Of a DNA stretch of 64,000 nt, positions 9,012 through 41,996 are shown piece after piece. Position numbers and translations under genes: made by a program. Positions within the stretch are counted from its first letter, which is position 1; each line of letters starts with the position of its first letter. The stretch spans positions 372,001-436,000 of the IMG/VR virus record IMGVR_UViG_3300046665_000548. The stretch is one strand, 5' to 3'. The notes beneath the pieces are model-generated. The model was not told the origin of the DNA and did no database searches. It saw only the letters and a program-made list of their open reading frames with translations.

Positions 9012-9341
9012 ATGGGTTTCCAAACCAGGAACATCGGTTGGTCTAGAAGAGTGCGCGCGAAGGTTTCTCCGCGCGCCGCCGAGGGCTATAAGTTCGAGGT
9101 ACGATTTAGAACCACCTATAAGTGGCGAAAGAATAAGACCGAGGTGATGCAGGAAATTCTGGATATAGTCCGATCCAGTTTCGGCAAATACAAAATCACC
9201 AAAAATGGCAAGAAAGTGCATCGTACACATTACACCGTGTACCTCGGGTCAGAGTCCGACCTGTTGATGCTGCGCATGGCTGATCGAGAAAACCTCGTTT
9301 TCCGGGTTTATAGCCTTTCTGAAAAACGCTTGACGGATTGA
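9012..9341 (+). CDS. Hypothetical basic protein, divergent member of the small C-terminal-motif family
   Basis: VYLGSESDLLMLRMA near the C-terminus. Confidence 0.55.
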   Translation: MGFQTRNIGWSRRVRAKVSPRAAEGYKFEVRFRTTYKWRKNKTEVMQEILDIVRSSFGKYKITKNGKKVHRTHYTVYLGSESDLLMLRMADRENLVFRVYSLSEKRLTD

Positions 9342-9357
9342 TAATCTCTGGTAGGAT
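9330..9357 (+). promoter_or_regulatory. Sigma70-like early promoter (TTGACG-N13-TGGTAGGAT)
   Basis: -35 TTGACG and extended -10 TGnTAGGAT upstream of 9379; the same TTGACG-N13-TGGTA arrangement occurs at 36383. Confidence 0.5.
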
Positions 9358-9378
9358 ACTTCTTAACAGGAGTGATCT

Positions 9379-9912
9379 ATGTCGGAGACTGACAAGCTAA
9401 TTCGGGCCATCGAGACCGGGGCGGTCATCACCTTGGGGTGGATGTCCATCAAGGTTATCGTCAGTTGGGTATTCCAGAACTGGATTCTTCTCGCTGTTCT
9501 TTTCGCTCTCGTCTGGGTTCATGACGCCGGGACCGGTCGCCGCTCTCGCGTGGAAAAGATCAACAATTTCCCGACCTCCAGCGTTACCGTTAGCGACGTG
9601 GCTTATCAGAAGCCATCGGGGGTTCCGGATTATTTTACCGCAACTGTGAAGAACGATGGTCCGGCCCGTATCTACGACTTGACCATCTCCTGCAATATGC
9701 AGTACCGGACTACCGCTTCCGCCGACGATAGCAGTTCCAAGGTGAAGACCACGGTGAACCTGGGTTACATCAATCCGGGAGAGACCGCCCGGCTGCGGTT
9801 AAACGCTGATGGTTCGGGCCTGCGTCTGATGGAAAACATCCGCCTAGGGGACTGTTCCCCGAACTTTACCCCCGAAATCAACGATATGCTTAAGCTTGGA
9901 AAGGTACAGTGA
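9379..9912 (+). CDS. Membrane-anchored protein with FxLYD/Ig-like domain
   Basis: N-terminal hydrophobic segments; ATVKNDGPARIYDLTISC..LGYINPGETAR; AGGAG SD. Confidence 0.55.
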   Translation: MSETDKLIRAIETGAVITLGWMSIKVIVSWVFQNWILLAVLFALVWVHDAGTGRRSRVEKINNFPTSSVTVSDVAYQKPSGVPDYFTATVKNDGPARIYDLTISCNMQYRTTASADDSSSKVKTTVNLGYINPGETARLRLNADGSGLRLMENIRLGDCSPNFTPEINDMLKLGKVQ

Positions 9913-10400
9913 TGTTGGCGATTGCTTCGATCTTCGGTCTGTTCGTCCTCTATCAGGATCAGATCAAGAAGGCTGCCACCTTCGGTATGATCGGATACGG
10001 CATCTATATCGCATACCTGACCGTTCTGCTGCCCTTCGCGGGCTTCCAGGCGAAGCCTGAGATCGATGAATACGTTCTCAACGAACGCGTCTCGGGGCAG
10101 GTTACGAGCGTTGCCATTTCCGGCACGAGCTACGGTAAGATCAAGATCACCGGAACGGTAGAGAACCGCACCGATTGGACGCTTGGATCGTACGTGGTAA
10201 CCTGCCGCGTTCAGGAGACGTTTGATGGCAATACCGCGATCATGGTGACGACTGGCTTCGCGAATATCGCGCCGAATTCAAAGGGGACCTTTGAGGCCGT
10301 GGTTGATGGCGTGAAGCAGGACAATCCGCGCGGCTTGCTCGGTGGAGACCGGACCATGCTGAACCACTTTTGCCGGTTCGATCACGCTGACCGGGCCTAA
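9909..10400 (+). CDS. Membrane-anchored FxLYD/Ig-like protein, paralogous to 9379..9912
   Basis: TM segments; ITGTVENRTDWTLGSYVVTC..NIAPNSKGTFE; GTGA overlap with the upstream gene. Confidence 0.55.
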   Translation: MMLAIASIFGLFVLYQDQIKKAATFGMIGYGIYIAYLTVLLPFAGFQAKPEIDEYVLNERVSGQVTSVAISGTSYGKIKITGTVENRTDWTLGSYVVTCRVQETFDGNTAIMVTTGFANIAPNSKGTFEAVVDGVKQDNPRGLLGGDRTMLNHFCRFDHADRA

Positions 10401-10403
10401 CAC

Positions 10404-10643
10404 ATGATCGACTACGCAGAAGTTGCCCGAAAGGCCGCTCACCGGATCGCAGGAACCTGTGATTCTTTGGATGGCGTGTTGGAGAACATGGGCCATGATG
10501 GGGCGGATAACCTGATGGAGTTCTGCAAGGAATTCGACCGGCTGGTGTTCTGCTGTACCTCCTGTGATTGGTGGCACGAGCAGAGCCAGAACGCCGATAG
10601 GGAAGGCAATTGGATTTGCCGGGAATGTGCTGCTGAAAAGTAA
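10404..10643 (+). CDS. Small zinc-ribbon-like protein
   Basis: CCTSCDWW...CREC motif pair. Confidence 0.55.
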   Translation: MIDYAEVARKAAHRIAGTCDSLDGVLENMGHDGADNLMEFCKEFDRLVFCCTSCDWWHEQSQNADREGNWICRECAAEK

Positions 10644-10649
10644 TGGGGT

Positions 10650-11264: not shown

Positions 11265-11267
11265 TAT

Positions 11268-11365: not shown

Positions 11366-11575
11366 TTAAGCGCGCGCAATGCTCTCGATATTTTCCGAGA
11401 AACGCAGCTTAAGCTTAAGAGCTTCGTTCATGCAGGTGGAGATAATCTGCCTGCCAACCAGGGTAGAGCCGGGAAGACTCTTGAGTTCTTCGTCAAGAAG
11501 TTCTTTGACGGCTCCGGCTTCGTAATCCGGATCGGCGTCGTAGTTGAGTTCCACAATCCAATAGGTCTTAGCCAT
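11366..11575 (-). CDS. Small motif-family protein (MAKTYWIVEL...EALKLKLRFS)
   Basis: GGAGA SD before ATG 11575; C-terminal A-x2-LKLRF. Confidence 0.6.
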   Translation of the reverse strand: MAKTYWIVELNYDADPDYEAGAVKELLDEELKSLPGSTLVGRQIISTCMNEALKLKLRFSENIESIARA

Positions 11576-11663
11576 TTTATCTCTCCGCAATGAGTTGGTA
11601 GTAAACAATAAGCCGAACGTAACGTCTGAATTTCTAACAGTCAAAAGGTCTTTTTGGTCAACT

Positions 11664-12215
11664 TCATACGTCGGATTCCAACCCATAAAAAATGAAATGG
11701 TAACGACGGTTTAGAGTTCGACGCCTCTGATTGGCGTCGATCCCATTATCCCAATCCGTGAGTGCGGATAGAAGCTTTCCTTCACGGCCAAGGAGACGAT
11801 CTGCGATCTCCGTGACGTGTAGGTTAGGAACGGCCTCTGGACGCTGCTCCAAGAGGCTCTTAAGGGCTTCCTGTTCACGTCCTGGCCCGAGATGCTGAGC
11901 CCACAATGCGAGCCCTATAGCGCCTGAGCGCCCGACACCAGCCTGACAATGGACAAGGATATTCGTTTTGTCCCTTCCGAAGTCGAGGGCTCGTTGAACT
12001 TGATCTTCGGTAGCCTGTTTGAAGACTGGCCAATCCGTATAGGGCGACGGCGCTGGCCTGTCGAGGTCAACGAACGGGAGAACAAGATGCTGCGGATGAG
12101 GCTTCTTAGTGAACCGTAGACGATTTTTCGCGTCCGGGTCTTCAAGCGAGATGACTGCTTCGAAGTCTCGCTTGTGGCGCTTTGCCCAACCAAATGCTGA
12201 AACTGTGATTTGCAT
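11664..12215 (-). CDS. Protein-tyrosine / dual-specificity phosphatase
   Basis: CX5R active-site motif VHCQAGVGRS; FVDLD acid loop. Confidence 0.85.
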   Translation of the reverse strand: MQITVSAFGWAKRHKRDFEAVISLEDPDAKNRLRFTKKPHPQHLVLPFVDLDRPAPSPYTDWPVFKQATEDQVQRALDFGRDKTNILVHCQAGVGRSGAIGLALWAQHLGPGREQEALKSLLEQRPEAVPNLHVTEIADRLLGREGKLLSALTDWDNGIDANQRRRTLNRRYHFIFYGLESDV

Positions 12216-12217
12216 CT

Positions 12218-13012: not shown

Positions 13013-13019
13013 ATTATCC

Positions 13020-13238
13020 TCACACGAAAACGATTTTGAATTCTACAGCTAAACGATGATCGGCAAAGAAGAAAGAAGTATATCCAAGCCGTCCTCCGTG
13101 CATGTCAATACTCCAATCTTTATCGTTCACCAGCTTTCGATCATTGAGCCATGCTAGTGCGGCGTACGTAGGAGCAAGGTAAATGTCGGTGTCAACAACG
13201 CGAACCTCGTTAGTGAGATTCCGAAGCTTCCGTGTCAT
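13020..13238 (-). CDS. Small motif-family protein
   Basis: Ends FFFADHRLAVEFKIVFV. Confidence 0.6.
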   Translation of the reverse strand: MTRKLRNLTNEVRVVDTDIYLAPTYAALAWLNDRKLVNDKDWSIDMHGGRLGYTSFFFADHRLAVEFKIVFV

Positions 13239-13675: not shown

Positions 13676-13987
13676 TTATTCGCCATCATCTTTTGCGCCG
13701 TCCCAATTCAGTTTGAACCAAATTGCATGCTTTTCGTCACGAAAGAACAAAGTAGGTAGACCAGTACCTCTCAGCATCCATCGCGCGTAATCGGCATCCT
13801 TGCGTAATTCATAGAGAATTGAATTGTCTGACGCGTAGGTGAACCTTTCAACCAAGCTCACCCAAGTGGTTTCTTTATCGATCCATTCGGATGCATTGAT
13901 ATAGAGGGGGAAGCCAAAGTCAAACCGGAACGGAAAATTTTCCAGGATGTACTGACTTACTTCGCTCCCTGTTTTATACAACAGCAT
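13676..13987 (-). CDS. Small motif-family protein
   Basis: LFFRDEKHAIWFKLNWD near the C-terminus; start overlaps the end of the SbcC gene. Confidence 0.65.
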   Translation of the reverse strand: MLLYKTGSEVSQYILENFPFRFDFGFPLYINASEWIDKETTWVSLVERFTYASDNSILYELRKDADYARWMLRGTGLPTLFFRDEKHAIWFKLNWDGAKDDGE

Positions 13988-16040
13988 CGTCCTCGAACTT
14001 GGTGAACGAGTCTTCTTTGTGGACCATCAGAATACGGGACACACGGCTTCTCAAGTTGTCTTTATGACTAATCAGGAACACGTTCTTTCCGCGATCTCGC
14101 GCCAATCCCTTCAGAATCTCAAGGGCCGCTTCTGCGCCCTGATCGTCCAACCCATTATCGATCAATTCGTCTACCCAAAGCAAGTTGACCGAATTATTCA
14201 GACTTTCCCAAACATCGCGGAACGACAGTGAGGTGGCCATGATGACGCGGTTCATCTCGCCGCGCGATAGCTGCTCGAAATCGAAATCGCGTCCGAGCAG
14301 TGTGATTTCTACTGACAGGTCAGATACGAAGCGAACTTCGTGCGGCAGTCCGAGCTTATCCAAATACTGGTTCAGGCGAGAATTCAAGTAGGCGAGATTT
14401 TGATCGATGATCCGCTTGCGAATAAACGAGTCTTTGGACGTGAGCAGCTTGAGCAGGAAGTCTTGATGCTTCATCAGGACGGTGAGATCATTGAGAGGAG
14501 CCATGTCGATCTTCTGGAGAGTTTCCTTTAGACTATCGATCTGCTGCGTGTACGGGTTCACCTTCTCGTTCTCTTTTTCAAGATCGCGAACAAGCATCTC
14601 GTACAACTGTTTGGCCTTGTAGACCTCATCACGACTTTTAAAGGTAGTGACTGGTCGTGCGCCAAGAGCCTTGATCGCATCCTTCGCGGCTTTCCACCTA
14701 CTATCTTGTTCAGTTACGTCGGCTTGCACCTCGGTGCACCGAACCTGTTGCTCTTCTGCACGCGCAATCAGTTCAGTAACGCGTTGTTCAGAGTCGCTAC
14801 GGACTTTGTTCATCTCGACCTTGAGGACGTTTTCGATCTCGTTGGTCAAACTATCGAGGCTTGCAAGTTCACGGGTGATCTTGGCTTCTAGAGTTTCCTT
14901 CTGCTTCTCCAGGTTCGCCTGTACCGTCTTCAGGTGATCTGTTCCTGAAAGGCCCTGGCCGCAGGTCCTGCACGAGTGCTCATCGGAGTGCTCAATCTCA
15001 TGCATTATTACGGTGAGTTCTTCTGTCAAGCGCGCGGCCTGAGAAGAATGACGTTCGGCGTCTTTCTCTTTCCGAGAAATCTCTGTCCTTAGTCGTGCAA
15101 TCTGCACCTCAGGATCAAGAGCGGTTGCTTCTTTGCGATAGCGATCAGCCTGCGAACAAACGCTATCAACCTCACGCTGAAGACGCGCGGCCTCACGCGA
15201 CTCCGCATCCTCGACTACTCGAAGCTCGCGCAGCTTAGTATCGAACGCATCCAACGCATCGAATGCTACAATCTCAGCCTCAAAGTTTATGTCCTGGACG
15301 GCCTGTATTTCCGCTTCGAGTTCAGCAACGGCATGAACATGATGCTTCAGCCAGTTCGAAGAATTCGTCTCGGCTTGCTTGATGGTAACCTCGATGCGGC
15401 TGTTCGCTTCGGTGGTTGCCTTCAGGTCCGCTTCGAGATCGCGAATCTGATCTTTGGTTCCATCAGGACCGTTCATGATCCTCTTCAATTCGTCGGCACG
15501 CTGAGAGATTTGGGTAACACCAAGAAGCTCTTCGATTACTGCTCGCTGTTCGCTTACAGTCATCTTCAGGAAAGGTTCGGTGAAAGTATTGAGTGCCAAC
15601 ACATGCTTGAACATAGTGTGGCTCATACCGATCAGACGCTCGATCTCTTCTTGCGTGTGGCGGTTCTCGCCCTGCGCCTGATCATCGCTGCTCGTTTCAG
15701 TATTGTTCACGTAGAAGCGCATCGTTACAGGCTTCTGTCCGCGCTCAATCCTATAGGATTTACCATCACGCTCGAACTCAATGGTTACGAGCATGGCCTT
15801 GTTGTTGATGTTGTTGACGAGATTTGGAATCTTGATCTTCGTCAGCGGCTTCCCGTATAGGGCATAGCTGATCGCTTGAAGAATAGATGTCTTGCCAGCG
15901 CCATTACGCGTGACTCCTCCGGTGCCATCGGTGTTCTCACCAAGGACGAGGGTCAATCCAGCACTATCAAGATTGATCGCTTGGGTAACGTTGCCAACAG
16001 ATAGGAAGTTCTTGAGTGTAAGCTTTGTAATACGGATCAT
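13974..16040 (-). CDS. SbcC/Rad50-like recombination ATPase (T4 gp46-like)
   Basis: KNFLSVGN, Walker A NGAGKTS, zinc hook CRTC, LSRGE signature, Walker B LWVDE, ISH loop. Confidence 0.93.
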   Translation of the reverse strand: MIRITKLTLKNFLSVGNVTQAINLDSAGLTLVLGENTDGTGGVTRNGAGKTSILQAISYALYGKPLTKIKIPNLVNNINNKAMLVTIEFERDGKSYRIERGQKPVTMRFYVNNTETSSDDQAQGENRHTQEEIERLIGMSHTMFKHVLALNTFTEPFLKMTVSEQRAVIEELLGVTQISQRADELKRIMNGPDGTKDQIRDLEADLKATTEANSRIEVTIKQAETNSSNWLKHHVHAVAELEAEIQAVQDINFEAEIVAFDALDAFDTKLRELRVVEDAESREAARLQREVDSVCSQADRYRKEATALDPEVQIARLRTEISRKEKDAERHSSQAARLTEELTVIMHEIEHSDEHSCRTCGQGLSGTDHLKTVQANLEKQKETLEAKITRELASLDSLTNEIENVLKVEMNKVRSDSEQRVTELIARAEEQQVRCTEVQADVTEQDSRWKAAKDAIKALGARPVTTFKSRDEVYKAKQLYEMLVRDLEKENEKVNPYTQQIDSLKETLQKIDMAPLNDLTVLMKHQDFLLKLLTSKDSFIRKRIIDQNLAYLNSRLNQYLDKLGLPHEVRFVSDLSVEITLLGRDFDFEQLSRGEMNRVIMATSLSFRDVWESLNNSVNLLWVDELIDNGLDDQGAEAALEILKGLARDRGKNVFLISHKDNLRSRVSRILMVHKEDSFTKFEDDAVV

Positions 16041-16095
16041 GATCAACTCTAAATATAAGCTGATCATAGGCCACGGGTCGGAAGGTTAGCAATAA

Positions 16096-27454: not shown

Positions 27455-27802
27455 TCAATCCGTTCCGTAAAAACGGATGCGAAACATGAGAAGATCGTGT
27501 TCTCGCTTGAAGCTGATCCAGAACGGAACGCTTTCGGCATTAGGATTTCCAGTAAGTATGCGATGCGCGTCAACTTGTTGGATAGGCGGGTACTGCACTC
27601 GGTATTGATCGTCCTCGTCCTGTAGGCCGTCGAGCCATTCGCGGAGTTGCAGGATAGGTTCGAGATTGATCTTCGAAAATGCTCTGCGACTTTCGCCCTC
27701 CCGATACAAGAACAAAAATGGCGGTACGCGAATCGCGAACCGTTCTTTTCGGATGCACCAATCCCAGGCGTTGCAATCTAGTGGTGATTTTTTGAGAGGC
27801 AT
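27455..27802 (-). CDS. Small motif-family protein
   Basis: ISFKREHDLLMFRIRFY at the C-terminus; GGAGG SD. Confidence 0.6.
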   Translation of the reverse strand: MPLKKSPLDCNAWDWCIRKERFAIRVPPFLFLYREGESRRAFSKINLEPILQLREWLDGLQDEDDQYRVQYPPIQQVDAHRILTGNPNAESVPFWISFKREHDLLMFRIRFYGTD

Positions 27803-30095: not shown

Positions 30096-30145
30096 ATTCT
30101 TGTTTACCGCAAGGTGATGCATGAGACTTCCGGTTAAGGGCCTAC

Positions 30146-32571: not shown

Positions 32572-33781
32572 TTAGACCCTTCAGAAGAGCATACAATTCT
32601 GGGAAAACATCTTCTGATTTCTCGCTGCGATTGGCATCGAGAGCGCCGTTGTATGTGATGCCACGGCGTAGAAGGTCGGGATTACTGGGGTTATTTAGTA
32701 GCTGGCTTTTGATGCTATTGAAATCATAATCCGCCAGCACTGGCTCCATCTTGGCCAACGCAGCCATTTTGATGCGCTCGGGTAAAATCCATGGAGCCAA
32801 ATATTCTGGATCGTAGATATAGTTGAAATGCACGTGGAGGCCACGACCATGCTTCATATACTGGTAATACTCGGGGACTGTGAGTAGGTTTTGCCATCCA
32901 ATGGTCTGATTGACCGACGTGTTGATCCACGTTTCTTTCTGAAGTCGATCTAGGTTGCGTTCAACGTCCGCCCATTTCGTGCCATATCTGAGAAGCGCGT
33001 TTCGTTCTCCGAGATCGTCAATCGAGCAGGAGATACGAACTTCCTTGAACGAACGCCACACCTCGAAGGCGCTCTCCGGAAGGTTGGTCATGTTGATGTT
33101 GTACCAGAGCACGACATCCTTGGCCTTGCCGGAGGCGCGCAGCCGCTCCAGGAACTCCCAGTGTTTCTTGATCAGCGTCGGCTCGCCACCGTTGATGTAG
33201 ATCAGTTCCAGGTGGGTGGAGTTCTCAAACAGATCATCCCAGAACAGGTCTTTCTCCGGCCAATCGAAACCGGTCAAGCCTTGGTATGATCGAACGAAAT
33301 CAAACTTTTGTTCGAGTTGCGCGTACTCGACCACCCACTTAGACGAAGAGGCGGGATTGCAGGAGCGACATTTGACGTTGCAGATATTACCAAGTCGTAA
33401 TTCCACAAAACGCAGTTTGGGTGCAATCCGTCCGTCGTTGTCCGTCTCTAGCGCAGCAACCTCGCGAGTTAGGTCCGCAAAATTTTCATTCTCGGCAAGC
33501 CTTTTAGATTTCACGCCATTCTCTTCCTCACGGAAGCAACGCATGCAAGCGAGCGGCTTTCGGCCGTCAAGCATCTGCTTTCGAACCTGCCGAAAGTAGT
33601 CGCTATTCATGATCTCATCTGTAGAGTTTTGGTTCAGGTTTAACCACTCAGTGCTTCCATCTTCACGAAAATTGCGAGATCGGTTGACGCCTTTGTCGTG
33701 ATTGCTCACGCAGCACAACGTGACGCCGCCGTGGGGATGACTGGCTAGATGCAACCATGGGAGAACGCAAAACGTGCTCAT
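32564..33781 (-). CDS. Radical SAM enzyme 3 (class A)
   Basis: Start MSTFCVLPW at 33781 (ATGA overlap); CNVKCRSC; GGEP. Confidence 0.92.
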   Translation of the reverse strand: MSTFCVLPWLHLASHPHGGVTLCCVSNHDKGVNRSRNFREDGSTEWLNLNQNSTDEIMNSDYFRQVRKQMLDGRKPLACMRCFREEENGVKSKRLAENENFADLTREVAALETDNDGRIAPKLRFVELRLGNICNVKCRSCNPASSSKWVVEYAQLEQKFDFVRSYQGLTGFDWPEKDLFWDDLFENSTHLELIYINGGEPTLIKKHWEFLERLRASGKAKDVVLWYNINMTNLPESAFEVWRSFKEVRISCSIDDLGERNALLRYGTKWADVERNLDRLQKETWINTSVNQTIGWQNLLTVPEYYQYMKHGRGLHVHFNYIYDPEYLAPWILPERIKMAALAKMEPVLADYDFNSIKSQLLNNPSNPDLLRRGITYNGALDANRSEKSEDVFPELYALLKGLND

Positions 33782-34977
33782 ACCCAATGATCTTCTATTA
33801 GTTTGTACATCTCCGGAAATGTAGCCGCAAAATCCTCTTTGCGATACGCATCGCCCTCTTTGATCTCTTTTACGGCTCGCTTCATGAGATATTCGTCGTA
33901 CTCGGAATTCTCCATATGGTTCATCAGGGGCGTGACCGCAGCTAGCGTTTGCTCTCTCCAAACCTTTGACCGGAGATGATTACAGATCACATCCTTTGCT
34001 GCTCTCGGTAGAATACTCACTTGATACCACGGCGGAAAGTAAACAAGATTGTGCCATACGGTGTCTTCGATACCGAGTGTATCAAGATACTCATGCAGTT
34101 CGTGGATATAGTAAATGTTGTGCAGCGACACGGTATGCGTGATGCCGAAGTCGAACTTCATGCGGTCGTCTAATGAGTTTCGGAGGTTCGTAAAATACTC
34201 CAAATTGGATGCAGCAAGGGACCAGTTGCCTGGATGTCGAAGGTACTCAAACCGCTTGCCGACACCATCAACGCTTAGGCCAATCGCCATCCCTGCGAAA
34301 TTATCGATAATGCGCTCGATCAGCTTTTCGGGGCGTTGAGTGCAATTTGAAGACATCCGGATGCGAACGTTCTTCGCGTATCCCTTGTCGATGAACTCAT
34401 CTAGTACAGTGGCGAACTCCTTCATGAAGAAGGGCTCGCCTCCCATGAACTCCAAAGATCGTACATGCGGCATCCACTCGTCGCGGGTGTTCCAGAAGGC
34501 GCTATCATTCGAGATTATCTTCTGGCTACCGATTGGATCGAAACTGATATTGCGATCAATTGCTTCTTTAATCCACTTAGACGATGCGTGTGGATGGCAT
34601 GTTCGGCACTTTAGATTGCAAGTATTATTCAGTATTAGCTGCCAGTCATCCGGAAGCCCAGGCTCGGCGTCATAGTCGATTACTCGTCCATGATCGTCAG
34701 CCATTTTATTGTAGATCATGCGCTTGGAAGTTTTACCGTTTGCTTCATCCGACCAGCAAATGTTGCACGTCTGTGGCTTCTCACCGTCGCGAAACTGTTT
34801 TCGAAGCTTCTTCATGTATGGGCCATGAAAGATTTCGTTCACAGAACTGGTCTGGAGTTTCAACGGAACGCCGTCATCTCCGGTAATTTTCTCAGACGCG
34901 ATACAGCAAGCCCGCAATATGCCATTCGCTTCATTAGCCAAATGCGTCCAAGGCAGAGAACAATAAGTTTTAGTCAT
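33778..34977 (-). CDS. Radical SAM enzyme 4 (class A)
   Basis: MTKTYCSLPW (TGATG overlap); CNLKCRTC; GGEP. Confidence 0.92.
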   Translation of the reverse strand: MTKTYCSLPWTHLANEANGILRACCIASEKITGDDGVPLKLQTSSVNEIFHGPYMKKLRKQFRDGEKPQTCNICWSDEANGKTSKRMIYNKMADDHGRVIDYDAEPGLPDDWQLILNNTCNLKCRTCHPHASSKWIKEAIDRNISFDPIGSQKIISNDSAFWNTRDEWMPHVRSLEFMGGEPFFMKEFATVLDEFIDKGYAKNVRIRMSSNCTQRPEKLIERIIDNFAGMAIGLSVDGVGKRFEYLRHPGNWSLAASNLEYFTNLRNSLDDRMKFDFGITHTVSLHNIYYIHELHEYLDTLGIEDTVWHNLVYFPPWYQVSILPRAAKDVICNHLRSKVWREQTLAAVTPLMNHMENSEYDEYLMKRAVKEIKEGDAYRKEDFAATFPEMYKLIEDHWV

Positions 34978-36359
34978 CAGTTTTTCATCCACCAGCGGAG
35001 CACATCCGGATAGGGTTCAAATATTTGTTCGATTGTAATGCGACCGTTCTGGCCATCGCCGCGATGCCGGGCGAGACGTTGCAGAAACTCGCGCCCCTTG
35101 TAAAACGCTTCTTCGTATCGATCTGGGAACTGTTCTTCGAACGTTGGGCGAGTGCGCATGTCTTGTAGTGTCGTCACCAAGGTCTGAGTACGGTGGTTGA
35201 CCTTTGGCTCCATGTAACAGAGCAGATCATCAAGAACGTCATCCAGCACTTTACGTGGTAGCGCGAAAGGCGAAACTAGCTTCTCCGGATCGAACGCGTA
35301 AACGATCTTCGTCAAGATATCGACATCTAGTTCGTTGGCTAGATCGAAGAACTCTTTCATGTGGAGGAGGCCCGGAAGGGTCAGCGTCAGATCAAGCTTC
35401 ATGCGATCACGCAACTCTGGGACCTCAAGTCCGGCCTTAAAGTTGACGAGCCATTCGTCCCAGTTCAACCCAGTGCGGATGTACTCACCGACGCGGCCCG
35501 TCGCGTCAATCGAGCAGCACATTAGGTAATTCTTATAGTGCGGAAGGATGTCCTTAAACAGGTTCACGCCCTTCCAATCGATCCTGGACAGGTTCGTGTT
35601 GTAGCGCGCGTAGACGTTCTTGGAGTGGCCGCTTTCTACCATGTGGTGCATAAGCTCCCAGTGCTTTTCCCACATCAGCGGTTCGCCCCCGACCCAGTAA
35701 AGCTCTTCCACGATCCCCTGCTTGCACGCATCCGCGAGTTCCACCTCGACCGTTCCGGTCTGGAACTCTTCAATCTGAGCCTTCATCTCCGGCACCATCC
35801 AGGGGTCATAGATCGGAGACCACTCGTCATGCTTGCGCTTCTCGGCTTCCCAAGAAGACGATAGTTGATGACCGCACATACGGCACTTAAAGTTACAGAG
35901 ATTGTTGATCCGATAGTCGAAGCTGATGACCGGCAAGCTGAGATGTCCGGTGTCATCTGTGGCCGCAAACACCTCATCTACCTTTTCGTGAAACAGGTGA
36001 TTAAACCAGTTACGGTAGACATCAATGTTCAGTATTCGGTCGTTGCAGACCATACACTCAGGAATAACCTCGCCCGCCATATGAGCAAGTCGAACCTTCT
36101 TCAAGGCATCGCTATTCCAATGTTCTTCAAGCGTCTTCGGAGCATACCCGGTTGATGTGTTTTCGCCAGACCCGCTGTCGATATACTGTCGGATGTAGCT
36201 TGCTTCTTCTCTCGACGCACAGCAAAGCCGCCGTTCGCTCTGAGGCGAGATATAAGTGTGGGTAAACGGAGCCATGCAGAACGTTTTGTTCGGAGAATCC
36301 TCCTTGAAACGACCACTGGTTTCAAAGAGGGGTCGGACGCGCTTCGGCTGATGAATCAT
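34977..36359 (-). CDS. Radical SAM enzyme 5 (class A)
   Basis: FCMAPF..CC..CMVC; CNFKCRMC; GGEP. Confidence 0.92.
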   Translation of the reverse strand: MIHQPKRVRPLFETSGRFKEDSPNKTFCMAPFTHTYISPQSERRLCCASREEASYIRQYIDSGSGENTSTGYAPKTLEEHWNSDALKKVRLAHMAGEVIPECMVCNDRILNIDVYRNWFNHLFHEKVDEVFAATDDTGHLSLPVISFDYRINNLCNFKCRMCGHQLSSSWEAEKRKHDEWSPIYDPWMVPEMKAQIEEFQTGTVEVELADACKQGIVEELYWVGGEPLMWEKHWELMHHMVESGHSKNVYARYNTNLSRIDWKGVNLFKDILPHYKNYLMCCSIDATGRVGEYIRTGLNWDEWLVNFKAGLEVPELRDRMKLDLTLTLPGLLHMKEFFDLANELDVDILTKIVYAFDPEKLVSPFALPRKVLDDVLDDLLCYMEPKVNHRTQTLVTTLQDMRTRPTFEEQFPDRYEEAFYKGREFLQRLARHRGDGQNGRITIEQIFEPYPDVLRWWMKN

Positions 36360-36445
36360 GAACTAGAGTTTACGGAAATCCCTTGACGAAAACCATTTGT
36401 TTGGTAACGATCAGGTATAGCGAATCACCTACGAAAAGCGACGCA

Positions 36446-36700
36446 ATGCCCGGTGAACCCCACAATACTAATGCACCGGAACAAGATTGGCAGCGCCCAC
36501 GTAACTGTCATTGCCTAACCACACAGCAACGCGCTTGCTGTTACGAGCAATGCGACCCTGAAGACGTGGGTCGCATCATGCGGAAGGGCGAAGGATTGAT
36601 GGTCTTCGGATATTCGCTCGTGGCTGTAGTCGCCATCACTATCGTGATGTTCGCAGTTAAATGTACGTTTGGATCAGGGTGCTTTGGGCAGTATCAATAG
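36446..36700 (+). CDS. Small Cys-rich membrane protein on the opposite strand within the rSAM array
   Basis: CHC..CC..C followed by a TM helix; TTGACG-N13-TGGTA promoter-like site at 36383. Confidence 0.45.
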   Translation: MPGEPHNTNAPEQDWQRPRNCHCLTTQQRACCYEQCDPEDVGRIMRKGEGLMVFGYSLVAVVAITIVMFAVKCTFGSGCFGQYQ

Positions 36701-36783
36701 ATGAACGGATCGCGCTTGCGTAGTTTACGCAACTTGTTCTTCAATTTGATCCAGTCGATGAAGCGTTGAAAGAGTGTAATCAT
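36694..36783 (-). CDS. 29-aa basic peptide MITLFQRFIDWIKLKNKLRKLRKRDPFIY
   Basis: Manually translated ATG 36783 to TGA 36694; TAAATA at 36789-36794, 5 nt upstream. Below the ORF-track size cutoff. Confidence 0.7.
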   Translation of the reverse strand: MITLFQRFIDWIKLKNKLRKLRKRDPFIY

Positions 36784-36798
36784 ACGACTATTTAGGCG

Positions 36799-38199
36799 TT
36801 AGATTACAGACCCGCTGATCAATTCCTGGCGAAAACCTAGATTGGTCGTCGGGATAGTATTGAGCCAATCCCTCATGGAAGGGAACACGTCGATACTCTT
36901 ACCTCGTCGTACGTCATACTGTGCGTGGAAGCTCTTAAAATCCTGTTGGAGCTTGCCCATTTCGTCCGCACCTGGATGAGGTGTCTTAACCGCGTCGAGA
37001 TAGTCTGCCAGCCGCTGGATATTCTCGATCTCGAAAGACGATACGAGAGGATTGTCCTTAAGCTGGGCGCAGAGCGTCACTAAAGTGTCACGACGTTCCG
37101 CCAGTACGGCTGGCGGAAGGACGAGCGGGCTCATGAAACTCGGAAAACGCACGATATTGGCGCTCCACCGTACGCGTTCGCTGCCAAACTGCCGCTTCCA
37201 CTCAATCATAACGTCCAGGAACTCAGGCAAACTGAACAGGGAGAGATTGTTGATGGTCATCATCATGGTTAGCTGCTTCACGTTGCCATGGGTCATGACC
37301 TTTTCGACGTTGGCCTTCCAGGTGTCGAAAATCATCCCGTCTCGGATGTACTCTGCTTGAGCGCCCATGGCTTCGTTGGACGAGAAGATTTGCAGGTCCG
37401 GGACGGCATGCGATTTTTCAATCAGCCGGTCGATCAGTTCTGGCTTCCCGCCCAGGTTGGTATTGATCGCAAATTGAACCCCATTGGTGCCGTTTTCCTC
37501 AAAGAAATCGAACAGCTTCCAAACGTCCACCGACATCAAAGGCTCACCGCCAGTGATGCGAAGCTGCTTCAGTGTTTTGGATAGTTCTGGCCACCACTTC
37601 CAGAATGCAGCGATATACGGGTTTCCTTCATTGCGTTTTCCGTACGGCTCGGCCCATGCTCCGTTGTGCTGGAACGCACCAGCGCCGTCACTAACGAGGT
37701 TCTGGTACGCGCCATGCGTGTTGATATCCTTGGCCCATGTAGTGGAGAACCCAGCGTTACAATACGAACATGCGAAGTTGCAGGTACGATTGAATGCGAT
37801 CTCAAGCGTCTCCAGATGCACGTCCGCATCCCATGGCATTTTGGCGATTTGGTCGATTGATGTTTGATCGTATCGGGAAGATTTGAAAGCTCGATCAGAA
37901 ACGTTGTTCCGATTAATCCCCTCAATTCGCCAGCAGTAGTCGCACTCAGAAGGCTGATGCCCGTCGAGCATCAGCTTGCGCATCTTTTTCTTGTGCACGG
38001 TGTTGTGAAGCGCTGACGGATTGACGGCGATCTCGTCTAGCTGAATCTTGTGTGCAGGCGGTAGGTGGCATGACGCGGTTGCGCCATGGCCGAGCCAGAT
38101 GGTTGAGTCGAGCCATTTTGTTGCACAGAACGACGGCGATACCGGATCGAGCACGCGAGCCTGATAGTCCTGCCAGGATTCGTCAGCCTTCTTTGTCAT
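36799..38199 (-). CDS. Radical SAM enzyme 6 (class B, FCxxKW N-terminus)
   Basis: FCATKW..SCH..ECDYCW; CNFACSYC; GGEP. Confidence 0.92.
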   Translation of the reverse strand: MTKKADESWQDYQARVLDPVSPSFCATKWLDSTIWLGHGATASCHLPPAHKIQLDEIAVNPSALHNTVHKKKMRKLMLDGHQPSECDYCWRIEGINRNNVSDRAFKSSRYDQTSIDQIAKMPWDADVHLETLEIAFNRTCNFACSYCNAGFSTTWAKDINTHGAYQNLVSDGAGAFQHNGAWAEPYGKRNEGNPYIAAFWKWWPELSKTLKQLRITGGEPLMSVDVWKLFDFFEENGTNGVQFAINTNLGGKPELIDRLIEKSHAVPDLQIFSSNEAMGAQAEYIRDGMIFDTWKANVEKVMTHGNVKQLTMMMTINNLSLFSLPEFLDVMIEWKRQFGSERVRWSANIVRFPSFMSPLVLPPAVLAERRDTLVTLCAQLKDNPLVSSFEIENIQRLADYLDAVKTPHPGADEMGKLQQDFKSFHAQYDVRRGKSIDVFPSMRDWLNTIPTTNLGFRQELISGSVI

Positions 38200-38480
38200 T
38201 GCTGAGCACCATGCCATCTCAGCTTAAACAGTATCGCGTGCTTCGGATTGTCGAACATATACATCACGTTTTCCGGTAGTCCCCCGATATACCCCTCATT
38301 CCAATACGTCCAATTGTCAGTATACATTGAACCGACGTGATCCATACACCAAAAGAGCCGCGCTTCGGCGGTTGGGCCTGTCGGGAGAGTGATGATATGC
38401 GGAAACCGCATCATCTCTGCGCGAACCTCTTCCAGCCTCTTTTGGGCTTGTTCCTCTGGCGTAAGATCGTCAATCATCAT
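38196..38480 (-). CDS. Small motif-family protein coupled to rSAM6
   Basis: MFDNPKHAILFKLRW; ATGA overlap with the rSAM6 start. Confidence 0.65.
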   Translation of the reverse strand: MMIDDLTPEEQAQKRLEEVRAEMMRFPHIITLPTGPTAEARLFWCMDHVGSMYTDNWTYWNEGYIGGLPENVMYMFDNPKHAILFKLRWHGAQQ

Positions 38481-39915
38481 TACCCATGACTGAGTCGAAC
38501 CAACCGTCAATGTCCTCTTGGGGTTCGGCTTCCGCAGACTCGCCACGCAGCCACGAACCAAGCTCGGGTGGGAACGTCGCGTAGATGTCCTTTCCACGTC
38601 GCTTGTCATACTGCTCGTAGAAGTTCTTAAAATCTGCAACCAGCCGTTCCATCGGAGCCGGGTCGGCATGTGGCTCATCCGCGTTGCGCAGATAGTTGAT
38701 CAAGCGCTCGGTGTGTTCCTTCTCGTGGTCCTGAAACAGCGGTCGGTTTGTTTTGCTGCACAGTTCACCGGCCGCCAACGTCTTGCGCAGCCAAGCCTCA
38801 AGCTTGTCAGCGATGGATTGCCGGATAGCAAGCGGCAGCACGAGAGGGCTTTGGAACGTCGGCCAACGCAGGATATTCATGGTGATGGCTGGAAAGTTAT
38901 GGTGATAACTGCGCTTCATTTCCATCACGTCATCCAAGAACTCAGTGATCGAGAACAGGCACAGGCTATTGATCGTCATCATACAGTGCAGGCTCTTAAC
39001 GTTGCCATGCGTTGCGAGATGATGAATATTCGCCTTCCATTGCTTGTAGTCCATTCCGTCACGGATGTACTCGGCTTGTGCACCGAATGCTTCGCACGAC
39101 GTGTAGATGTCGAGGTTATCCACGGCATGGCTCTTCGTAACCAGTCGATCAATGAACTCTTGTTTCGCGCCCAAATTTGAATTGATCGCGAAATGCATTT
39201 TCGTGCCTGGGTTCTTCTCGAACCAGTCAAATAGCCGCCAAACATCGACGCTCATCAACGGCTCGCCGCCAGTGATGCGAATCTGCTGGAGCGTCTGAGT
39301 CAATTCAGGCCACCACTTCCAGAACGCCTCGATATACGGATTTGGCTGAGCGCGCCCGAAAGGCGCTGCGCTAGGATGGGTGTGCGTGTAGTGCTGGCGC
39401 TTATCGGATGATAGCCCGGTGTACGGCCCGTCCGTCTTGATGTCTTTCACCCACGTGGTGGAAAATGACGGATTGCAGTACGAACAAGCAAAGTTGCACG
39501 TCCTGTCGAAAGCAATTTCGAGGGTCTTTAGCGATGCATCATCATCTGGGTCAGCCGCTGCCATGGCTGCGATCTCTTTGTCTGTAGAGATAAGAGTCTT
39601 CCAAACACGGTCCGACACCACCTCAGGACCAAGGTCTTCAAACTTCCAGCAATATTCGCACTCGCTAGGACGCTCGCCTTCGAGCATCAGCTTACGCATC
39701 TTCTTCTTGTGCCGCGTGTTATGAATGGCACTTGGATTGTGCTGGATTTCTTCGACCTCGATCTGATGCGATGGCGGGTGATGACACGAAGCAGTTTGGC
39801 CACCGGCAAGCCAAATAGTGGCGTTGTTCCACTTAGCGGCGCAGAACGACTTAGATACGGGATCGATTACCCGAGCCTTGTAGTCGAGATAGCTTTCGAT
39901 GTTATTCTTAGGCAT
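38470..39915 (-). CDS. Radical SAM enzyme 7 (class B)
   Basis: FCAAKW..SCHHP..ECEYCW; CNFACSYC; GGEP. Confidence 0.92.
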   Translation of the reverse strand: MPKNNIESYLDYKARVIDPVSKSFCAAKWNNATIWLAGGQTASCHHPPSHQIEVEEIQHNPSAIHNTRHKKKMRKLMLEGERPSECEYCWKFEDLGPEVVSDRVWKTLISTDKEIAAMAAADPDDDASLKTLEIAFDRTCNFACSYCNPSFSTTWVKDIKTDGPYTGLSSDKRQHYTHTHPSAAPFGRAQPNPYIEAFWKWWPELTQTLQQIRITGGEPLMSVDVWRLFDWFEKNPGTKMHFAINSNLGAKQEFIDRLVTKSHAVDNLDIYTSCEAFGAQAEYIRDGMDYKQWKANIHHLATHGNVKSLHCMMTINSLCLFSITEFLDDVMEMKRSYHHNFPAITMNILRWPTFQSPLVLPLAIRQSIADKLEAWLRKTLAAGELCSKTNRPLFQDHEKEHTERLINYLRNADEPHADPAPMERLVADFKNFYEQYDKRRGKDIYATFPPELGSWLRGESAEAEPQEDIDGWFDSVMGNDD

Positions 39916-40127
39916 TAAATTTGGTCACTCCAGAACATCTTGTATAGCACGCGGTCTTTCGGATCGGCAAAATGAACGTAATAGTTCCCTACCCCATGTC
40001 CGAAACTAAACGCGCCGTTCGTCTGCTCAAATACCCATTCTGCCGCATCGAGAAAGTGCGTGTTCCATGTACCGTGCCGCCAAGGGTGAGGCATCAGTTC
40101 GCATTCGTACGAAAATATCTTCATCAT
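39915..40127 (-). CDS. Small motif-family protein coupled to rSAM7 (start uncertain)
   Basis: VHFADPKDRVLYKMFW; TAATG overlap with the rSAM7 start. Confidence 0.6.
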   Translation of the reverse strand: MMKIFSYECELMPHPWRHGTWNTHFLDAAEWVFEQTNGAFSFGHGVGNYYVHFADPKDRVLYKMFWSDQI

Positions 40128-40216
40128 TGTTCGGCAGTGACATTTTGCCGTAGCTGAAGTTATGCTCCGTACGATTTTCTCCATACATGGAGTGCACTTC
40201 ATGTCGAGAGGAAAAC

Positions 40217-41620
40217 CTATTGGGCTGCTGTTCGACATAGTTCCCAAAAGTCTTCCATCTCTGGGAAGCTCTCCAAGAATTTCGTACCTCGACGGCGATC
40301 ATGTTCAGTAAAGAAGCGAAAGAAATCGGCGCGATCACGCTTCAGCTTCTCTGGCGGAAGCTGATCACCTGCCCGCATCCATTCGAGATCGCGTTCAAGC
40401 TTGCTGATCTCGTAATCCTTCACACCTCGCAAGAACGTGTCGGACGTTTCGATCTTCGTTTTGAGGTATTCGATATCATCGGCCAGGATGTCTCGATAGC
40501 GCTGCGGAAGAATCTGGATTGACTGCCACGCAGGCGTACTCAACAGGGGAGGATCGAACCAGATCAATTGGCGATCATCATTGAACTCCTGCCGCATCTG
40601 AATGATCTGATCCAACAATGGTCGCAGCGAAGTGATCGACATAACGTTCATCGTGATGATGTACGAGATAGATCGACGCGCCGGTTTTTCGAGATACTTG
40701 CGTGAGTTCTCCAGCATGTAGTCGAAGTTCATGCCGTGACGAATGTACTCGGCCTTCTTGCCGTACGCGTCTACGCTCACGAACGTCATCAAATGCTCAA
40801 CTGCGCACTGATCCGTTATCGTGTTGGCCTGTTCGATAAACTTAGCGAACAGGCGAGGATCGGGACAAAAATTTGAGGTGAGACCAAGCTGAAGGTCCGG
40901 CTTTGGATTCTTGATGATGTAATCGAACACCTTGTAGGTGTTCTTGTCCATCAACGGCTCCCCTCCGGTCATGCGGAAATGCTTCAGGCCCTTGTACATT
41001 TCAGGCCACCATTTCCAGAAAGCGTCCACATAAGGATTGGCATCCTTGTGGGGGATCGGCATAAGCCCTTTCTGCCTTAAGTGCTCGATGCTATTGTGAG
41101 GCAAGGTGGTAGGGTACGGACCAAAGCGCTCAACCTCCTCGCGCCACGTGGTAGACAGATGGGGGCTGCAATAGCTGCATTTGAAATTGCAGGCAGAGTT
41201 GAAATTGACCTCGACATATCGCGGCGACACATCCCAATCCCAAGGATGCTCCATGATCTCATCGAACGTTTCCATGGCCCATTGTTCGCCAGACCGATAG
41301 TGGCGGTCGCTGAGATGGTCTCCAGGCTGATCTTCGATATTCCAGCAATACTGACACTCGGACGGCCGGTCGCCCTCCAGCATCATCTTGCGCATGCGCT
41401 TCTTATGCTGCGTGTTATGGAGCGCGGTCGGGTTAACGGCGAGTTCATCAAGCGGCACCTTGTGCACGCGAGGATGATAACAGCTTTGCGTCAGGCCCGC
41501 AGTGAGATTTATCGATACCTGATGCCACTTTGCGATGCACATACCCGGCCCGACTGAATCCAGCTTGGGCTTCACCTGTTCTGCGTTCGTCAGGTAGACG
41601 CTTTTGATCTTATCGTTCAT
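40217..41620 (-). CDS. Radical SAM enzyme 8 (class B)
   Basis: MCIAKW..SCYHP..ECQYCW; CNFKCSYC; GGEP. Confidence 0.92.
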   Translation of the reverse strand: MNDKIKSVYLTNAEQVKPKLDSVGPGMCIAKWHQVSINLTAGLTQSCYHPRVHKVPLDELAVNPTALHNTQHKKRMRKMMLEGDRPSECQYCWNIEDQPGDHLSDRHYRSGEQWAMETFDEIMEHPWDWDVSPRYVEVNFNSACNFKCSYCSPHLSTTWREEVERFGPYPTTLPHNSIEHLRQKGLMPIPHKDANPYVDAFWKWWPEMYKGLKHFRMTGGEPLMDKNTYKVFDYIIKNPKPDLQLGLTSNFCPDPRLFAKFIEQANTITDQCAVEHLMTFVSVDAYGKKAEYIRHGMNFDYMLENSRKYLEKPARRSISYIITMNVMSITSLRPLLDQIIQMRQEFNDDRQLIWFDPPLLSTPAWQSIQILPQRYRDILADDIEYLKTKIETSDTFLRGVKDYEISKLERDLEWMRAGDQLPPEKLKRDRADFFRFFTEHDRRRGTKFLESFPEMEDFWELCRTAAQ

Positions 41621-41808
41621 GCGAATCTCAGCTTAAAAATCACAGCGTCTCTTTCAGACGAAAACCAATACGTCCACGTGGCAGTGCCATCGTGATGATA
41701 GTGCGCGAAATCATAGGTGACGTTGTTTGATCGATAATCGCGAACCCACCCACTCATCCTATTGATTCGATCAAAAGTCACTTTATTGCGGAACGAAACC
41801 TTAATCAT
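41617..41808 (-). CDS. Small motif-family protein (63 aa) coupled to rSAM8
   Basis: Ends WFSSERDAVIFKLRFA; ATGA overlap. Confidence 0.75.
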   Translation of the reverse strand: MIKVSFRNKVTFDRINRMSGWVRDYRSNNVTYDFAHYHHDGTATWTYWFSSERDAVIFKLRFA

Positions 41809-41996
41809 GCGAATCTCAGCTTGAAGATAACGGCGTCGCGTTCGGAATGAAAATAATACGAGAAAGTGCGCGTACCGTCATCATTCAGGTTTCTAAAACG
41901 GGGTTCTACTTTATCTGTTCGGTAGAATTCTATCCAATTGAGCATCGTATAGATATCCAACCCTGTCATCTTTTTCCTGATCTTAACCTCAGTCAT
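41805..41996 (-). CDS. Small motif-family protein (63 aa), tandem paralog of 41617..41808
   Basis: Ends YFHSERDAVIFKLRFA; the last 18 nt are identical to those of the neighbour. Confidence 0.75.
   Translation of the reverse strand: MTEVKIRKKMTGLDIYTMLNWIEFYRTDKVEPRFRNLNDDGTRTFSYYFHSERDAVIFKLRFA

What the first reader, a model, noticed from the sequence alone, without database searches (positions are those of the whole stretch)
9012..41996. Nine-member family of small proteins sharing a C-terminal F-x4-(D/H)A-x2-F(K/R)L-x-(F/W)-like motif
Seen: YLGSESDLLMLRMA (9012), TCMNEALKLKLRF (11366), FADHRLAVEFKIVF (13020), FRDEKHAIWFKLNW (13676), FKREHDLLMFRIRF (27455), FDNPKHAILFKLRW (38196), FADPKDRVLYKMFW (39915), FSSERDAVIFKLRF (41617), FHSERDAVIFKLRF (41805). 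The N-termini are highly divergent. Inference: an expanded small alpha/beta fold (RRM- or ferredoxin-like) with a constant C-terminal docking helix and a variable specificity part. It could be an adaptor, anti-defence or RNA-binding repertoire.
Basis: partly seen in the sequence, partly recalled or inferred. Interest (0 to 1): 0.6.

Follow-up and report, generated by a model that had tools for sequence, protein, structure and literature searches.

The report
Expanded mini-domain family in a megaphage
Seven of the nine small genes encode one undescribed 60-residue alpha/beta domain that occurs 74 times in this 608-kb T4-like phage and dozens of times in related huge phages; its function is unknown, and the best guess is a diversified protein-binding scaffold.

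Summary
Seven of the nine ORFs (13020, 13676, 27455, 38196, 39915, 41617, 41805, all on the minus strand) belong to one family. The ORF at 9012 is at best a remote look-alike, and 11366 is not a member.

The window lies in a 607,744-bp T4-like phage. An iterated profile finds 74 copies there, about 8% of genes, spread over the whole genome. Most end exactly one residue after the final Trp/Phe. Codons under the motif vary synonymously, so selection acts on the protein.

AlphaFold gives a confident beta-alpha-beta-beta-alpha domain, a ferredoxin-like fold lacking strand 4, with no specific structural relative. Pfam, NCBIfam, PHROGs and PADLOC have no model for it. About 6,000 metagenomic cluster representatives match.

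It is multi-copy in related huge phages: 51 matches in cultured Sinorhizobium phage Phosso, 46 in a 480-kb phage and 5 in Atu_ph07. It is absent from T4, KVP40, S-PM2, CBB and BcepSauron.

Conserved positions look structural, while the beta2-beta3 hairpin and the N-terminal extensions are hypervariable. Domains are mostly acidic.

Best reading (inferred): a stable scaffold diversified to bind many targets. The function is untested.

The parts
41805..41996 (-). Family member, 63 aa if started at Met14 of the open frame, which runs up to 42035. It consists of the domain only. Its stop overlaps the start of the next member (ATGA).
   Evidence: HMM E 1.3e-13. AF2 model at pLDDT 84.8, strand 1 starting right after Met14. 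49% identical to its neighbour 41617. Start checked.
41617..41808 (-). Family member, 63 aa, domain only. It lies directly upstream of a 467-aa radical SAM gene (40217-41620), with a 4-nt overlap.
   Evidence: HMM E 3.2e-16; translation; neighbour gene.
39915..40238 (-). Family member, 107 aa. An N-terminal four-Cys (CxxC...CxC) extension precedes the C-terminal domain. It sits between two radical SAM genes.
   Evidence: HMM E 1.9e-11. Ortholog P0008 (45% identical, same start, same Cys pattern, identical C-terminal 17 residues) also lies directly upstream of a 481-aa radical SAM gene in a JGI contig.
38196..38480 (-). Family member, 94 aa. The listed 160-aa ORF runs into the upstream radical SAM gene, so the likely start is at 38480.
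   Evidence: HMM E 9.9e-14; gene model.
27455..27802 (-). Family member, 115 aa, with the domain in the C-terminal 70 residues. It is the last gene after the carbamoyltransferase.
   Evidence: HMM E 2.1e-9.
13676..13987 (-). Family member, 103 aa, with a long insertion between helix 1 and strand 3 and an 8-residue acidic tail. Its start overlaps by 14 nt the 3' end of the upstream SbcC/gp46-like ATPase gene (13974-16067), so it lies just downstream of that gene.
   Evidence: HMM E 1.4e-9.
13020..13238 (-). Family member, 72 aa, domain only.
   Evidence: HMM E 7.3e-8.
9012..9341 (+). Not shown to be a member. It is a 109-aa protein with a similar order of elements plus an extra final strand, and it lacks the family Trp residues.
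   Evidence: HMM E 5.9. hhalign probability 7%. Orthologs P0160 and P0161 keep the same non-family sequence. AF2 at pLDDT 73.5 gives b-b-a-b-b-a-b.
11366..11686 (-). Not a member. Only the last-helix string resembles the motif.
   Evidence: No HMM hit; hhalign probability 5% over 23 columns.

Best explanation
The seven ORFs are copies of an undescribed, phage-specific domain of about 60 residues with topology b1-a1-b2-b3-a2. Its hallmarks are [H/Y]x[V/I]x[V/I/L] in strand 1, 'W-C/L-x-E/D-N-x-x-G-x-W' at the end of helix 1 and start of strand 2, and 'F-x-F-x4-D-A-x2-F-K-L-R-W-x-stop' in strand 3 and helix 2.

The domain is hugely expanded in one clade of very large T4-like phages, with 74 copies in this 608-kb genome.

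Shown: the family, its copy number, selection at the protein level, the fold class, and the absence of any catalogued relative.

Inferred: it is not an enzyme and not a general nucleic-acid binder. It is a stable mini-scaffold whose conserved residues only hold the fold together. The hypervariable b2-b3 hairpin, the open edge of strand 1 and the unrelated N-terminal extensions (for example a four-Cys knuckle in 39915) give each copy its own partner. On this reading the set is a diversified repertoire of small binders used by the phage against host proteins (host take-over or counter-defence) or to regulate its own proteins.

The confidence given is for the functional reading. The descriptive part is near certain.
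For: Family and significance.

Protein-level selection: the codons for D, A, F, K, L, R and W vary freely among copies.

Fold: AF2 pLDDT 84.8.

Conservation profile: the only positions above about 2.5 bits are W34, C/L35, N38, aromatic 43, aromatic 60, F62, D67, A68, F71, K72, L73 and W75, with C/F39 borderline at 2.51. These are hydrophobic or capping positions. Hairpin columns have occupancy 0.16-0.55.

No catalytic-type polar constellation is present, and there are no hits in Pfam, NCBIfam, PHROGs or PADLOC.

Domains are acidic to neutral.

Copies are about equally distant from each other within and between phages, at roughly 25-35% identity. Only about one clear ortholog is shared with phages whose portal is about 49% identical. 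Closer phages keep orthologs at 45-61%. This is fast divergence under a fold-only constraint.

The family is multi-copy wherever it occurs: 51, 46, 17, 12, 9, 5 and 5 matches. In Phosso the copies sit in arrays of small genes among tRNA genes.

Tandem two-domain proteins make up 33 of 147 outside representatives.
Against: There is no direct evidence of any binding partner, expression time or phenotype.

The homodimer prediction gave no verdict.

The promoter-class analysis was inconclusive, and no sequencing run was listed.

Burial of the conserved residues is inferred from periodicity, not measured on coordinates.

The conserved Lys/Arg pair and the fixed position of the C-terminus (one residue after Trp in 47 of 74 copies) could mark a common functional site, which would argue against a pure scaffold.
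Confidence: 0.4

Rival explanations
1. The family is a repertoire of small nucleic-acid-binding proteins (RRM/KH-like RNA binders or DNA-binding regulators). Each would control different transcripts or promoters of a very large genome, like the roughly 35-copy Zn-ribbon expansion proposed as transcription factors in Bacillus phage G.
For: The fold class is shared with RRM, KH and papillomavirus E2 DNA-binding domains at Z 5-6.7. Lys and Arg on the last helix and aromatic residues on strands are conserved. One member carries a four-Cys knuckle. A precedent exists in phage G (PMC7824862).
Against: The median domain pI is 5.6 and the median net charge is -1. Strand 4 and the RNP1/RNP2 motifs are absent. 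No RRM or KH Pfam hit appears even at E<=1. The structural matches are no better than the background for small sandwiches (note).
Confidence: 0.15
2. The copies in the window are partners or substrates of the neighbouring radical SAM enzymes. They could be precursor-like proteins modified on the aromatic/basic C-terminal motif, or specificity subunits.
For: Four members are interleaved with the last three of eight tandem radical SAM paralogs, with overlapping stops and starts, and a fifth ends the operon. The ortholog of 39915 is again directly upstream of a 481-aa radical SAM gene in another contig. Family members also lie near the two other radical SAM genes of the genome.
Against: 69 of 74 copies lie outside the window's radical SAM operon (at most one or two of them near the two stand-alone radical SAM genes). 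The 480-kb relative has 41-46 copies and no homolog of these radical SAM enzymes. The three copies next to the enzymes are not each other's closest paralogs. The domain is a folded unit, unlike typical precursor peptides. With 8% of genes in the family, adjacency is expected fairly often by chance.
Confidence: 0.07
3. The constant C-terminal domain is a targeting or docking module, for packaging into the very large capsid or for attachment to a phage structure. The N-terminal parts would be the cargo.
For: The domain is always at the C-terminus, with a fixed end and unrelated N-terminal extensions of 0-180 residues. Several copies lie near structural genes in the window.
Against: Many copies are the domain alone (63-76 aa) and so carry no cargo. 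Two-domain tandems are common. The sequences diverge almost to saturation, which is unexpected if all dock on one site.
Confidence: 0.1
4. These are selfish or nearly neutral filler genes that proliferate by duplication in huge genomes and serve the phage little.
For: Copy number tends to rise with genome size within the clade: 74 at 608 kb, 46-51 at 470-480 kb and 9 at 360 kb, although Atu_ph07 has only 5 at 490 kb. Few orthologs are shared between distant relatives.
Against: Purifying selection on the fold is evident from synonymous variation. No decayed copies were seen among the 74. Orthologs are kept between closer phages. No DNA-level repeat or mobility gene accompanies the copies.
Confidence: 0.08

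Closest known systems
Lineage-specific expansions of small domains in jumbo phages, e.g. the ~35-copy Zn-ribbon of Bacillus phage G (Iyer et al. 2021, PMC7824862)
   Same: One small domain is multiplied to dozens of divergent copies in a very large phage genome, with function only guessed.
   Different: The fold is different, with no metal site as a family feature. The copy number is higher (74). The family is shared as multi-copy by a whole clade, including cultured Phosso and Atu_ph07, rather than by one phage. It is not mentioned in that survey or in the Atu_ph07 and AP-J-162 papers.
Ferredoxin-like two-layer sandwiches (ACT, RRM, KH-like, GlmM C-terminal domain; structural-genomics proteins VPA0419 2jz5 and VC_A0919 2khd)
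   Same: The order b-a-b-b-a is the same, with two helices packed on one face of an antiparallel sheet. Foldseek gives TM 0.46-0.62 and VIA-align gives Z 5.2-6.7.
   Different: Strand 4 is missing and the protein ends with helix 2. There is no sequence relation: Foldseek E is 0.06 or worse, the profile search against PDB sequences gives E>0.1, and Pfam finds nothing. These scores are at the background level for small domains.
Uncharacterised viral clusters in BFVD and the ESM Atlas (Atu_ph07 A0A2L0UZT1, BcepSauron A0A482MMM8, 'uncultured Caudovirales phage' proteins)
   Same: They are the best structural matches, with TM up to 0.69 and rmsd 1.6-2.8 over 62-70 residues. All are viral and all are unnamed.
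   Different: They carry no annotation to transfer. BcepSauron has no sequence-level member at E<=1e-3.
Small early host-take-over proteins of T4-type phages (my own knowledge, not tested here)
   Same: They are small, often acidic proteins, encoded in runs of short genes between core modules and poorly conserved between relatives.
   Different: T4's small early proteins are not one paralogous family, and T4 itself has no member of this family.

Membership tests
The family itself (uncatalogued b-a-b-b-a 'W...F-x4-DA-xx-FKLRW' domain) | Significant match to the family profile over the whole domain, not only the last helix | tested here: met
   Seven window ORFs score E 7e-8 to 3e-16 with HMM coverage of about 60 positions. 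The null search of reversed proteins gives nothing at E<=0.1. The ORFs at 9012 and 11366 fail.
The family itself | Near-invariant Trp in helix 1, Phe at the end of strand 3, Asp-Ala helix cap, and F-K-L-R-W ending 0-8 residues before the stop | tested here: met
   Column statistics: W 98%, F 96%, D 87%, A 83%, F 96%, K 82%, L 82%, W 82%. The tail is exactly 1 residue in 47 of 74 copies and in 64 of 145 outside representatives. Several window copies carry substitutions (H for D, R for K, F for W) but keep the pattern.
The family itself | Predicted b1-a1-b2-b3-a2 fold | tested here: met
   AF2 of the 41805 protein gives pLDDT 84.8, with E15-21, H25-38, E44-50, E56-62 and H65-75. Only this one member was modelled.
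RRM (RNA recognition motif) | Four-stranded b-a-b-b-a-b sheet with RNP1 and RNP2 aromatic/basic motifs, and a match to Pfam RRM models | tested here: not met
   There is no strand 4. No Pfam hit appears for 65+19 members even at E 0.1-1. Domains are mostly acidic.
ACT / RAM ligand-binding regulatory domains | b-a-b-b-a-b fold with the Gly-rich b1-a1 ligand loop, a match to Pfam ACT, and usually fusion to metabolic enzymes | tested here: not met
   There are structural matches only, at Z 6-6.7. No Pfam ACT hit. No enzyme fusions were found among long members.
RiPP precursor or partner proteins of radical SAM/SPASM maturases | Consistent genomic linkage to the maturase wherever the family occurs | tested here: not met
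   69 of 74 copies lie outside the window's radical SAM operon. A 480-kb relative has 41 copies and no such enzyme.
Known anti-phage defence components (PADLOC) | Match to a PADLOC model | tested here: not met
   0 of 65 members match at E<=0.01. PADLOC does not hold anti-defence proteins, so that class is not tested.
Known anti-defence proteins | Homology to a characterised inhibitor or sponge, or inhibition of a defence system | not testable with these tools
   No library of anti-defence families was available. BFVD and PDB fold searches gave no named inhibitor.

The most novel reading that the evidence does not exclude
Huge T4-like phages of the Atu_ph07/Phosso clade carry a dedicated, fast-diversifying library of dozens of mini-binders built on one minimal b-a-b-b-a scaffold, about 8% of their genes. 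Each would be tuned to a different host or defence protein, so that growth of the genome to 0.5-0.6 Mb is partly growth of this counter-host repertoire. This would be a phage analogue of the ankyrin/F-box-type expansions of giant eukaryotic viruses. It would be directly testable in the cultured Sinorhizobium and Agrobacterium systems.
Probability: 0.3. Interest if true: 0.75.

Novelty: new variant of a known kind. Interest (0 to 1): 0.6.

Why it matters
Most genes of huge phages are unexplained. Here a single unnamed domain accounts for about one gene in twelve of a 608-kb phage and for dozens of genes in its relatives. It is missing from Pfam, NCBIfam and PHROGs, although about 6,000 metagenomic clusters match it.

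Giving it a profile would annotate thousands of 'ORFans' at once and mark one clade of megaphages. Two members of the clade, Sinorhizobium phage Phosso and Agrobacterium phage Atu_ph07, are in culture, so its role can be tested experimentally. If it is a binder repertoire, it bears on why phage genomes grow so large, and it offers a very small, highly designable natural scaffold.

Tried and rejected
- DNA-level element instead of a protein motif: rejected, because codons under the motif vary synonymously and the downstream sequences differ.
- The terminal 'W-G-stop' as a device for translational coupling: rejected. 24 of 67 copies abut or overlap a downstream same-strand gene, against 264 of 740 genome-wide, which is the same 36%.
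- Chance motif: rejected.
- Megablast of the window against INPHARED phages, and tblastn of one outside member: no match.
A degenerate DNA pattern for DAxxFKLRWG-stop found 12 IMG/VR contigs.
- Foldseek against PDB and BFVD, VIA-align wide and the ESM Atlas: only generic or unnamed matches. The profile against PDB sequences found nothing.
- Homodimer prediction (two copies of the 76-aa frame of the 41805 gene): no verdict, score 0.02. This is not evidence either way.
- Early/late promoter assignment from enriched intergenic motifs: the family did not differ clearly from other genes and most genes were unassigned.
- Public sequencing runs holding window 37500-43000: none was listed.
- N-terminal extensions of long members, here and elsewhere: no Pfam domain except one weak MazG.
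- Unit duplication of 'small gene + radical SAM': not supported.
- Literature: no relevant paper with the motif string, and the family is not mentioned in the jumbo-phage survey or in the Atu_ph07 and AP-J-162 papers.

Full report
WHAT THE WINDOW IS

The window is bases 372,001-436,000 of a 607,744-bp IMG/VR virus record rated 100% complete, with GC 0.517. It carries:
- a T4-type portal gene (529-2334, Pfam Portal_T4, E 2e-96);
- gp46/gp47-like SbcCD genes;
- a baseplate hub gene;
- an S8+M23 peptidase;
- a carbamoyltransferase;
- eight tandem radical SAM paralogs.

By portal protein the nearest cultured phages are Sinorhizobium phage Phosso (469 kb, 49% identity) and Agrobacterium phage Atu_ph07 (490 kb, 48.7%). 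The Rak2-like jumbo phages follow.

CHECK OF THE OBSERVATION

All nine strings are present. A regular expression for the motif hits 25 times in the whole genome, and 21 of these lie within 8 residues of a stop codon. Ten codon-block shuffles gave 0-2 hits and the reversed genome gave none.

A profile built from the last ~70 residues of those ORFs was iterated on all six-frame ORFs. It converged after five rounds on 74 ORFs at E<=1e-3. The same profile finds nothing at E<=0.1 in reversed proteins.

The other two fail:
- 9012-9341(+) scores E 5.9 with the HMM and 7% probability in hhalign. Its orthologs in two other contigs keep the same non-family sequence. Its low-confidence model (pLDDT 73.5) is a complete b-a-b-b-a-b sandwich with an extra N-terminal strand. 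It may be a remote structural cousin, but membership is not shown.
- 11366-11686(-) matches only over the last helix, at 5% probability.

THE SIGNAL IS IN THE PROTEIN, NOT THE DNA

Under the conserved D-A-x-x-F-K-L-R-W the copies use all synonymous codons (GAT/GAC, GCN, TTT/TTC, AAA/AAG, six Leu codons and six Arg codons). The sequence after the stop is unrelated between copies.

The end of the protein is remarkably fixed. In 47 of 74 copies exactly one residue, mostly Gly, follows the last aromatic residue. The same holds for 64 of 145 outside representatives. This is not a translational-coupling device, because the share of copies that abut the next gene equals the genome average.

ANATOMY

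A crude gene model gives 947 genes, so the family is about 8% of them. Members occur in every 50-kb bin, on both strands, singly or in runs of two or three. The median length is 95 aa, and the domain is almost always at the C-terminus.

AlphaFold2 with the paralog alignment models the 41805 protein at pLDDT 84.8 as b1(15-21)-a1(25-38)-b2(44-50)-b3(56-62)-a2(65-75).

In an alignment with 79 outside members, the informative columns are:
- [H/Y]-x-[V/I]-x-[V/I/L] in b1;
- W (98%), C/L, E/D, N, G and W/Y/F around the end of a1 and the start of b2;
- F-x-F at the end of b3;
- D-A as helix cap;
- F, K, L, R, W in a2.

The b2-b3 hairpin columns have occupancy of only 0.16-0.55, and insertions of up to about 40 residues occur there and after a1. 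By helical and strand periodicity, nearly all conserved positions are core, cap or turn residues. Lys72 could pair with the conserved acidic residue of a1. This is inference, since no coordinates were available.

Domains are acidic to neutral, with median pI 5.6 and net charge from -4 to +2.

N-terminal extensions are unrelated to one another and have no Pfam domain. In 39915 the extension is a four-Cys knuckle conserved in its ortholog.

RELATIVES

Pfam, NCBIfam, PHROGs and PADLOC have no model that matches window members, the 65 aligned paralogs or ten canonical outside members.

An exhaustive profile search of 1.84 billion cluster representatives found 5,965 proteins at E<=1e-3. Nearly all are 50-200 aa, unnamed and from metagenomes. 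A fifth of the best 147 have two tandem domains.

Copy numbers with the same profile are as follows.

| Phage or record | Size | Matches |
|---|---|---|
| Sinorhizobium phage Phosso | 469 kb | 51 (all annotated 'hypothetical protein'; an array at 3-14 kb among tRNA genes) |
| Agrobacterium phage Atu_ph07 | 490 kb | 5 |
| IMG/VR phage with terminal repeats | 480 kb | 46 |
| IMG/VR phage with terminal repeats | 360 kb | 9 |
| IMG/VR record | 251 kb | 12 |
| IMG/VR fragment | 69.7 kb | 17 |
| IMG/VR fragment | 36.5 kb | 5 |
| CBB, Vibrio phage 2.275.O, T4, KVP40, S-PM2, BcepSauron | - | 0 |

The three large IMG/VR genomes have portals 48-50% identical to the window's. The family therefore marks this clade of very large T4-like phages. 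Whether the thousands of other metagenomic hits belong to the same clade was not tested.

FOLD COMPARISONS

Foldseek against the PDB gave no match at E<=1e-3. VIA-align gave Z 5.2-6.7 to ACT, RRM, KH, NikR and designed ferredoxin folds, which is the background level for small sandwiches. BFVD and the ESM Atlas returned only unnamed viral proteins and clusters, including Atu_ph07 proteins. A profile search of PDB sequences found nothing.

EVOLUTION

Within the genome, the median identity to the best paralog is about 35% over short stretches. Only three pairs are recent, at 49-63%.

Against Phosso and the 480-kb phage, almost all copies score no better than against their own paralogs (25-35 bits). 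Only the copy at genome 161-553 has clear orthologs of about 50% identity in both. Closer relatives keep orthologs at 45-61% identity, with changes concentrated outside the last strand and helix.

The family thus diverges much faster than core genes while the fold signature is kept.

MECHANISM

Taken together, the data best fit a stable mini-scaffold diversified for binding many different partners. The supporting points are:
- fold-only conservation;
- a hypervariable hairpin and hypervariable extensions;
- an exposed edge where strand 4 of the ferredoxin fold would lie;
- mostly acidic surfaces;
- very high copy number;
- fast turnover;
- location in runs of small genes.

Host take-over or counter-defence is the most likely arena. 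None of this is shown directly, and I put it at about 0.4.

Nucleic-acid binding (0.15) is disfavoured by charge and by the missing RNP features.

Linkage to the radical SAM enzymes is real in the window and in one related contig. It cannot be the family's general role, because 69 of 74 copies lie outside the window's radical SAM operon and a relative with 41 copies lacks these enzymes.

A packaging or docking tag is unlikely for domain-only copies, and neutral filler is unlikely given the purifying selection.

A homodimer prediction returned no verdict. Promoter typing was inconclusive. No sequencing run was listed.

NOVELTY

Expansion of a small domain in a jumbo phage has a precedent in the Zn-ribbon of phage G (PMC7824862). 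This domain, however, is not catalogued and is not mentioned in the survey or in the papers on the related cultured phages. It is larger in copy number and shared across a clade. I rate it a new variant of a known kind of feature, of moderate to high interest because it is testable in two cultured systems.

Noticed in passing
window 27814-44408 (-): One long minus-strand operon holds eight tandem radical SAM paralogs (30146-41620). Four of them (30146-34992) have a SPASM-type Fe-S domain placed N-terminal of the radical SAM core, which is an unusual order. The operon also holds 486-, 307- and 289-aa unknowns and a carbamoyltransferase (27814-29271). Two more paralogs lie at genome 135483 and 582386. 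A 480-kb relative has none. This could be a DNA or protein hypermodification pathway.
   Followed up: partly
window 49287-63604 (-): A 3,670-aa ORF is followed by a 1,101-aa ORF. The only hit is a weak CBM_5_12 match, so they are probably fibre or decoration proteins.
   Followed up: partly
window 24594-27149 (+): A single 851-aa protein combines an S8 subtilase, a He_PIG Ig-like domain and an M23 peptidase, directly after the baseplate hub gene (23500-24579).
   Followed up: no
window 11664-12215 (-): A dual-specificity protein phosphatase-like gene (DSPc, E 2e-7) lies next to the non-member ORF at 11366.
   Followed up: no
whole genome, intergenic regions: Two classes of 7-mers are enriched 7-16-fold upstream of genes: NTAAATA (T4 late-promoter-like) and GCTTGACA with GTGGTAGATTG (sigma-70-like -35 and extended -10).
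   Followed up: partly
genome 161-553 (+) = L004:161-553: This is the only family member with clear orthologs of about 50% identity in both Phosso and the 480-kb phage. It may be a conserved founding copy with a core role.
   Followed up: partly
window 39915-40238 (-): The N-terminal extension carries a CxxC...CxC four-Cys pattern that is conserved in the ortholog P0008. It is likely a small zinc knuckle fused to the family domain.
   Followed up: partly
window 9012-9341 (+): This 109-aa protein has orthologs in two other contigs (60-67% identical). Its model is a complete ferredoxin-like sandwich with an extra strand. Its function is unknown and it is not a family member by sequence.
   Followed up: partly
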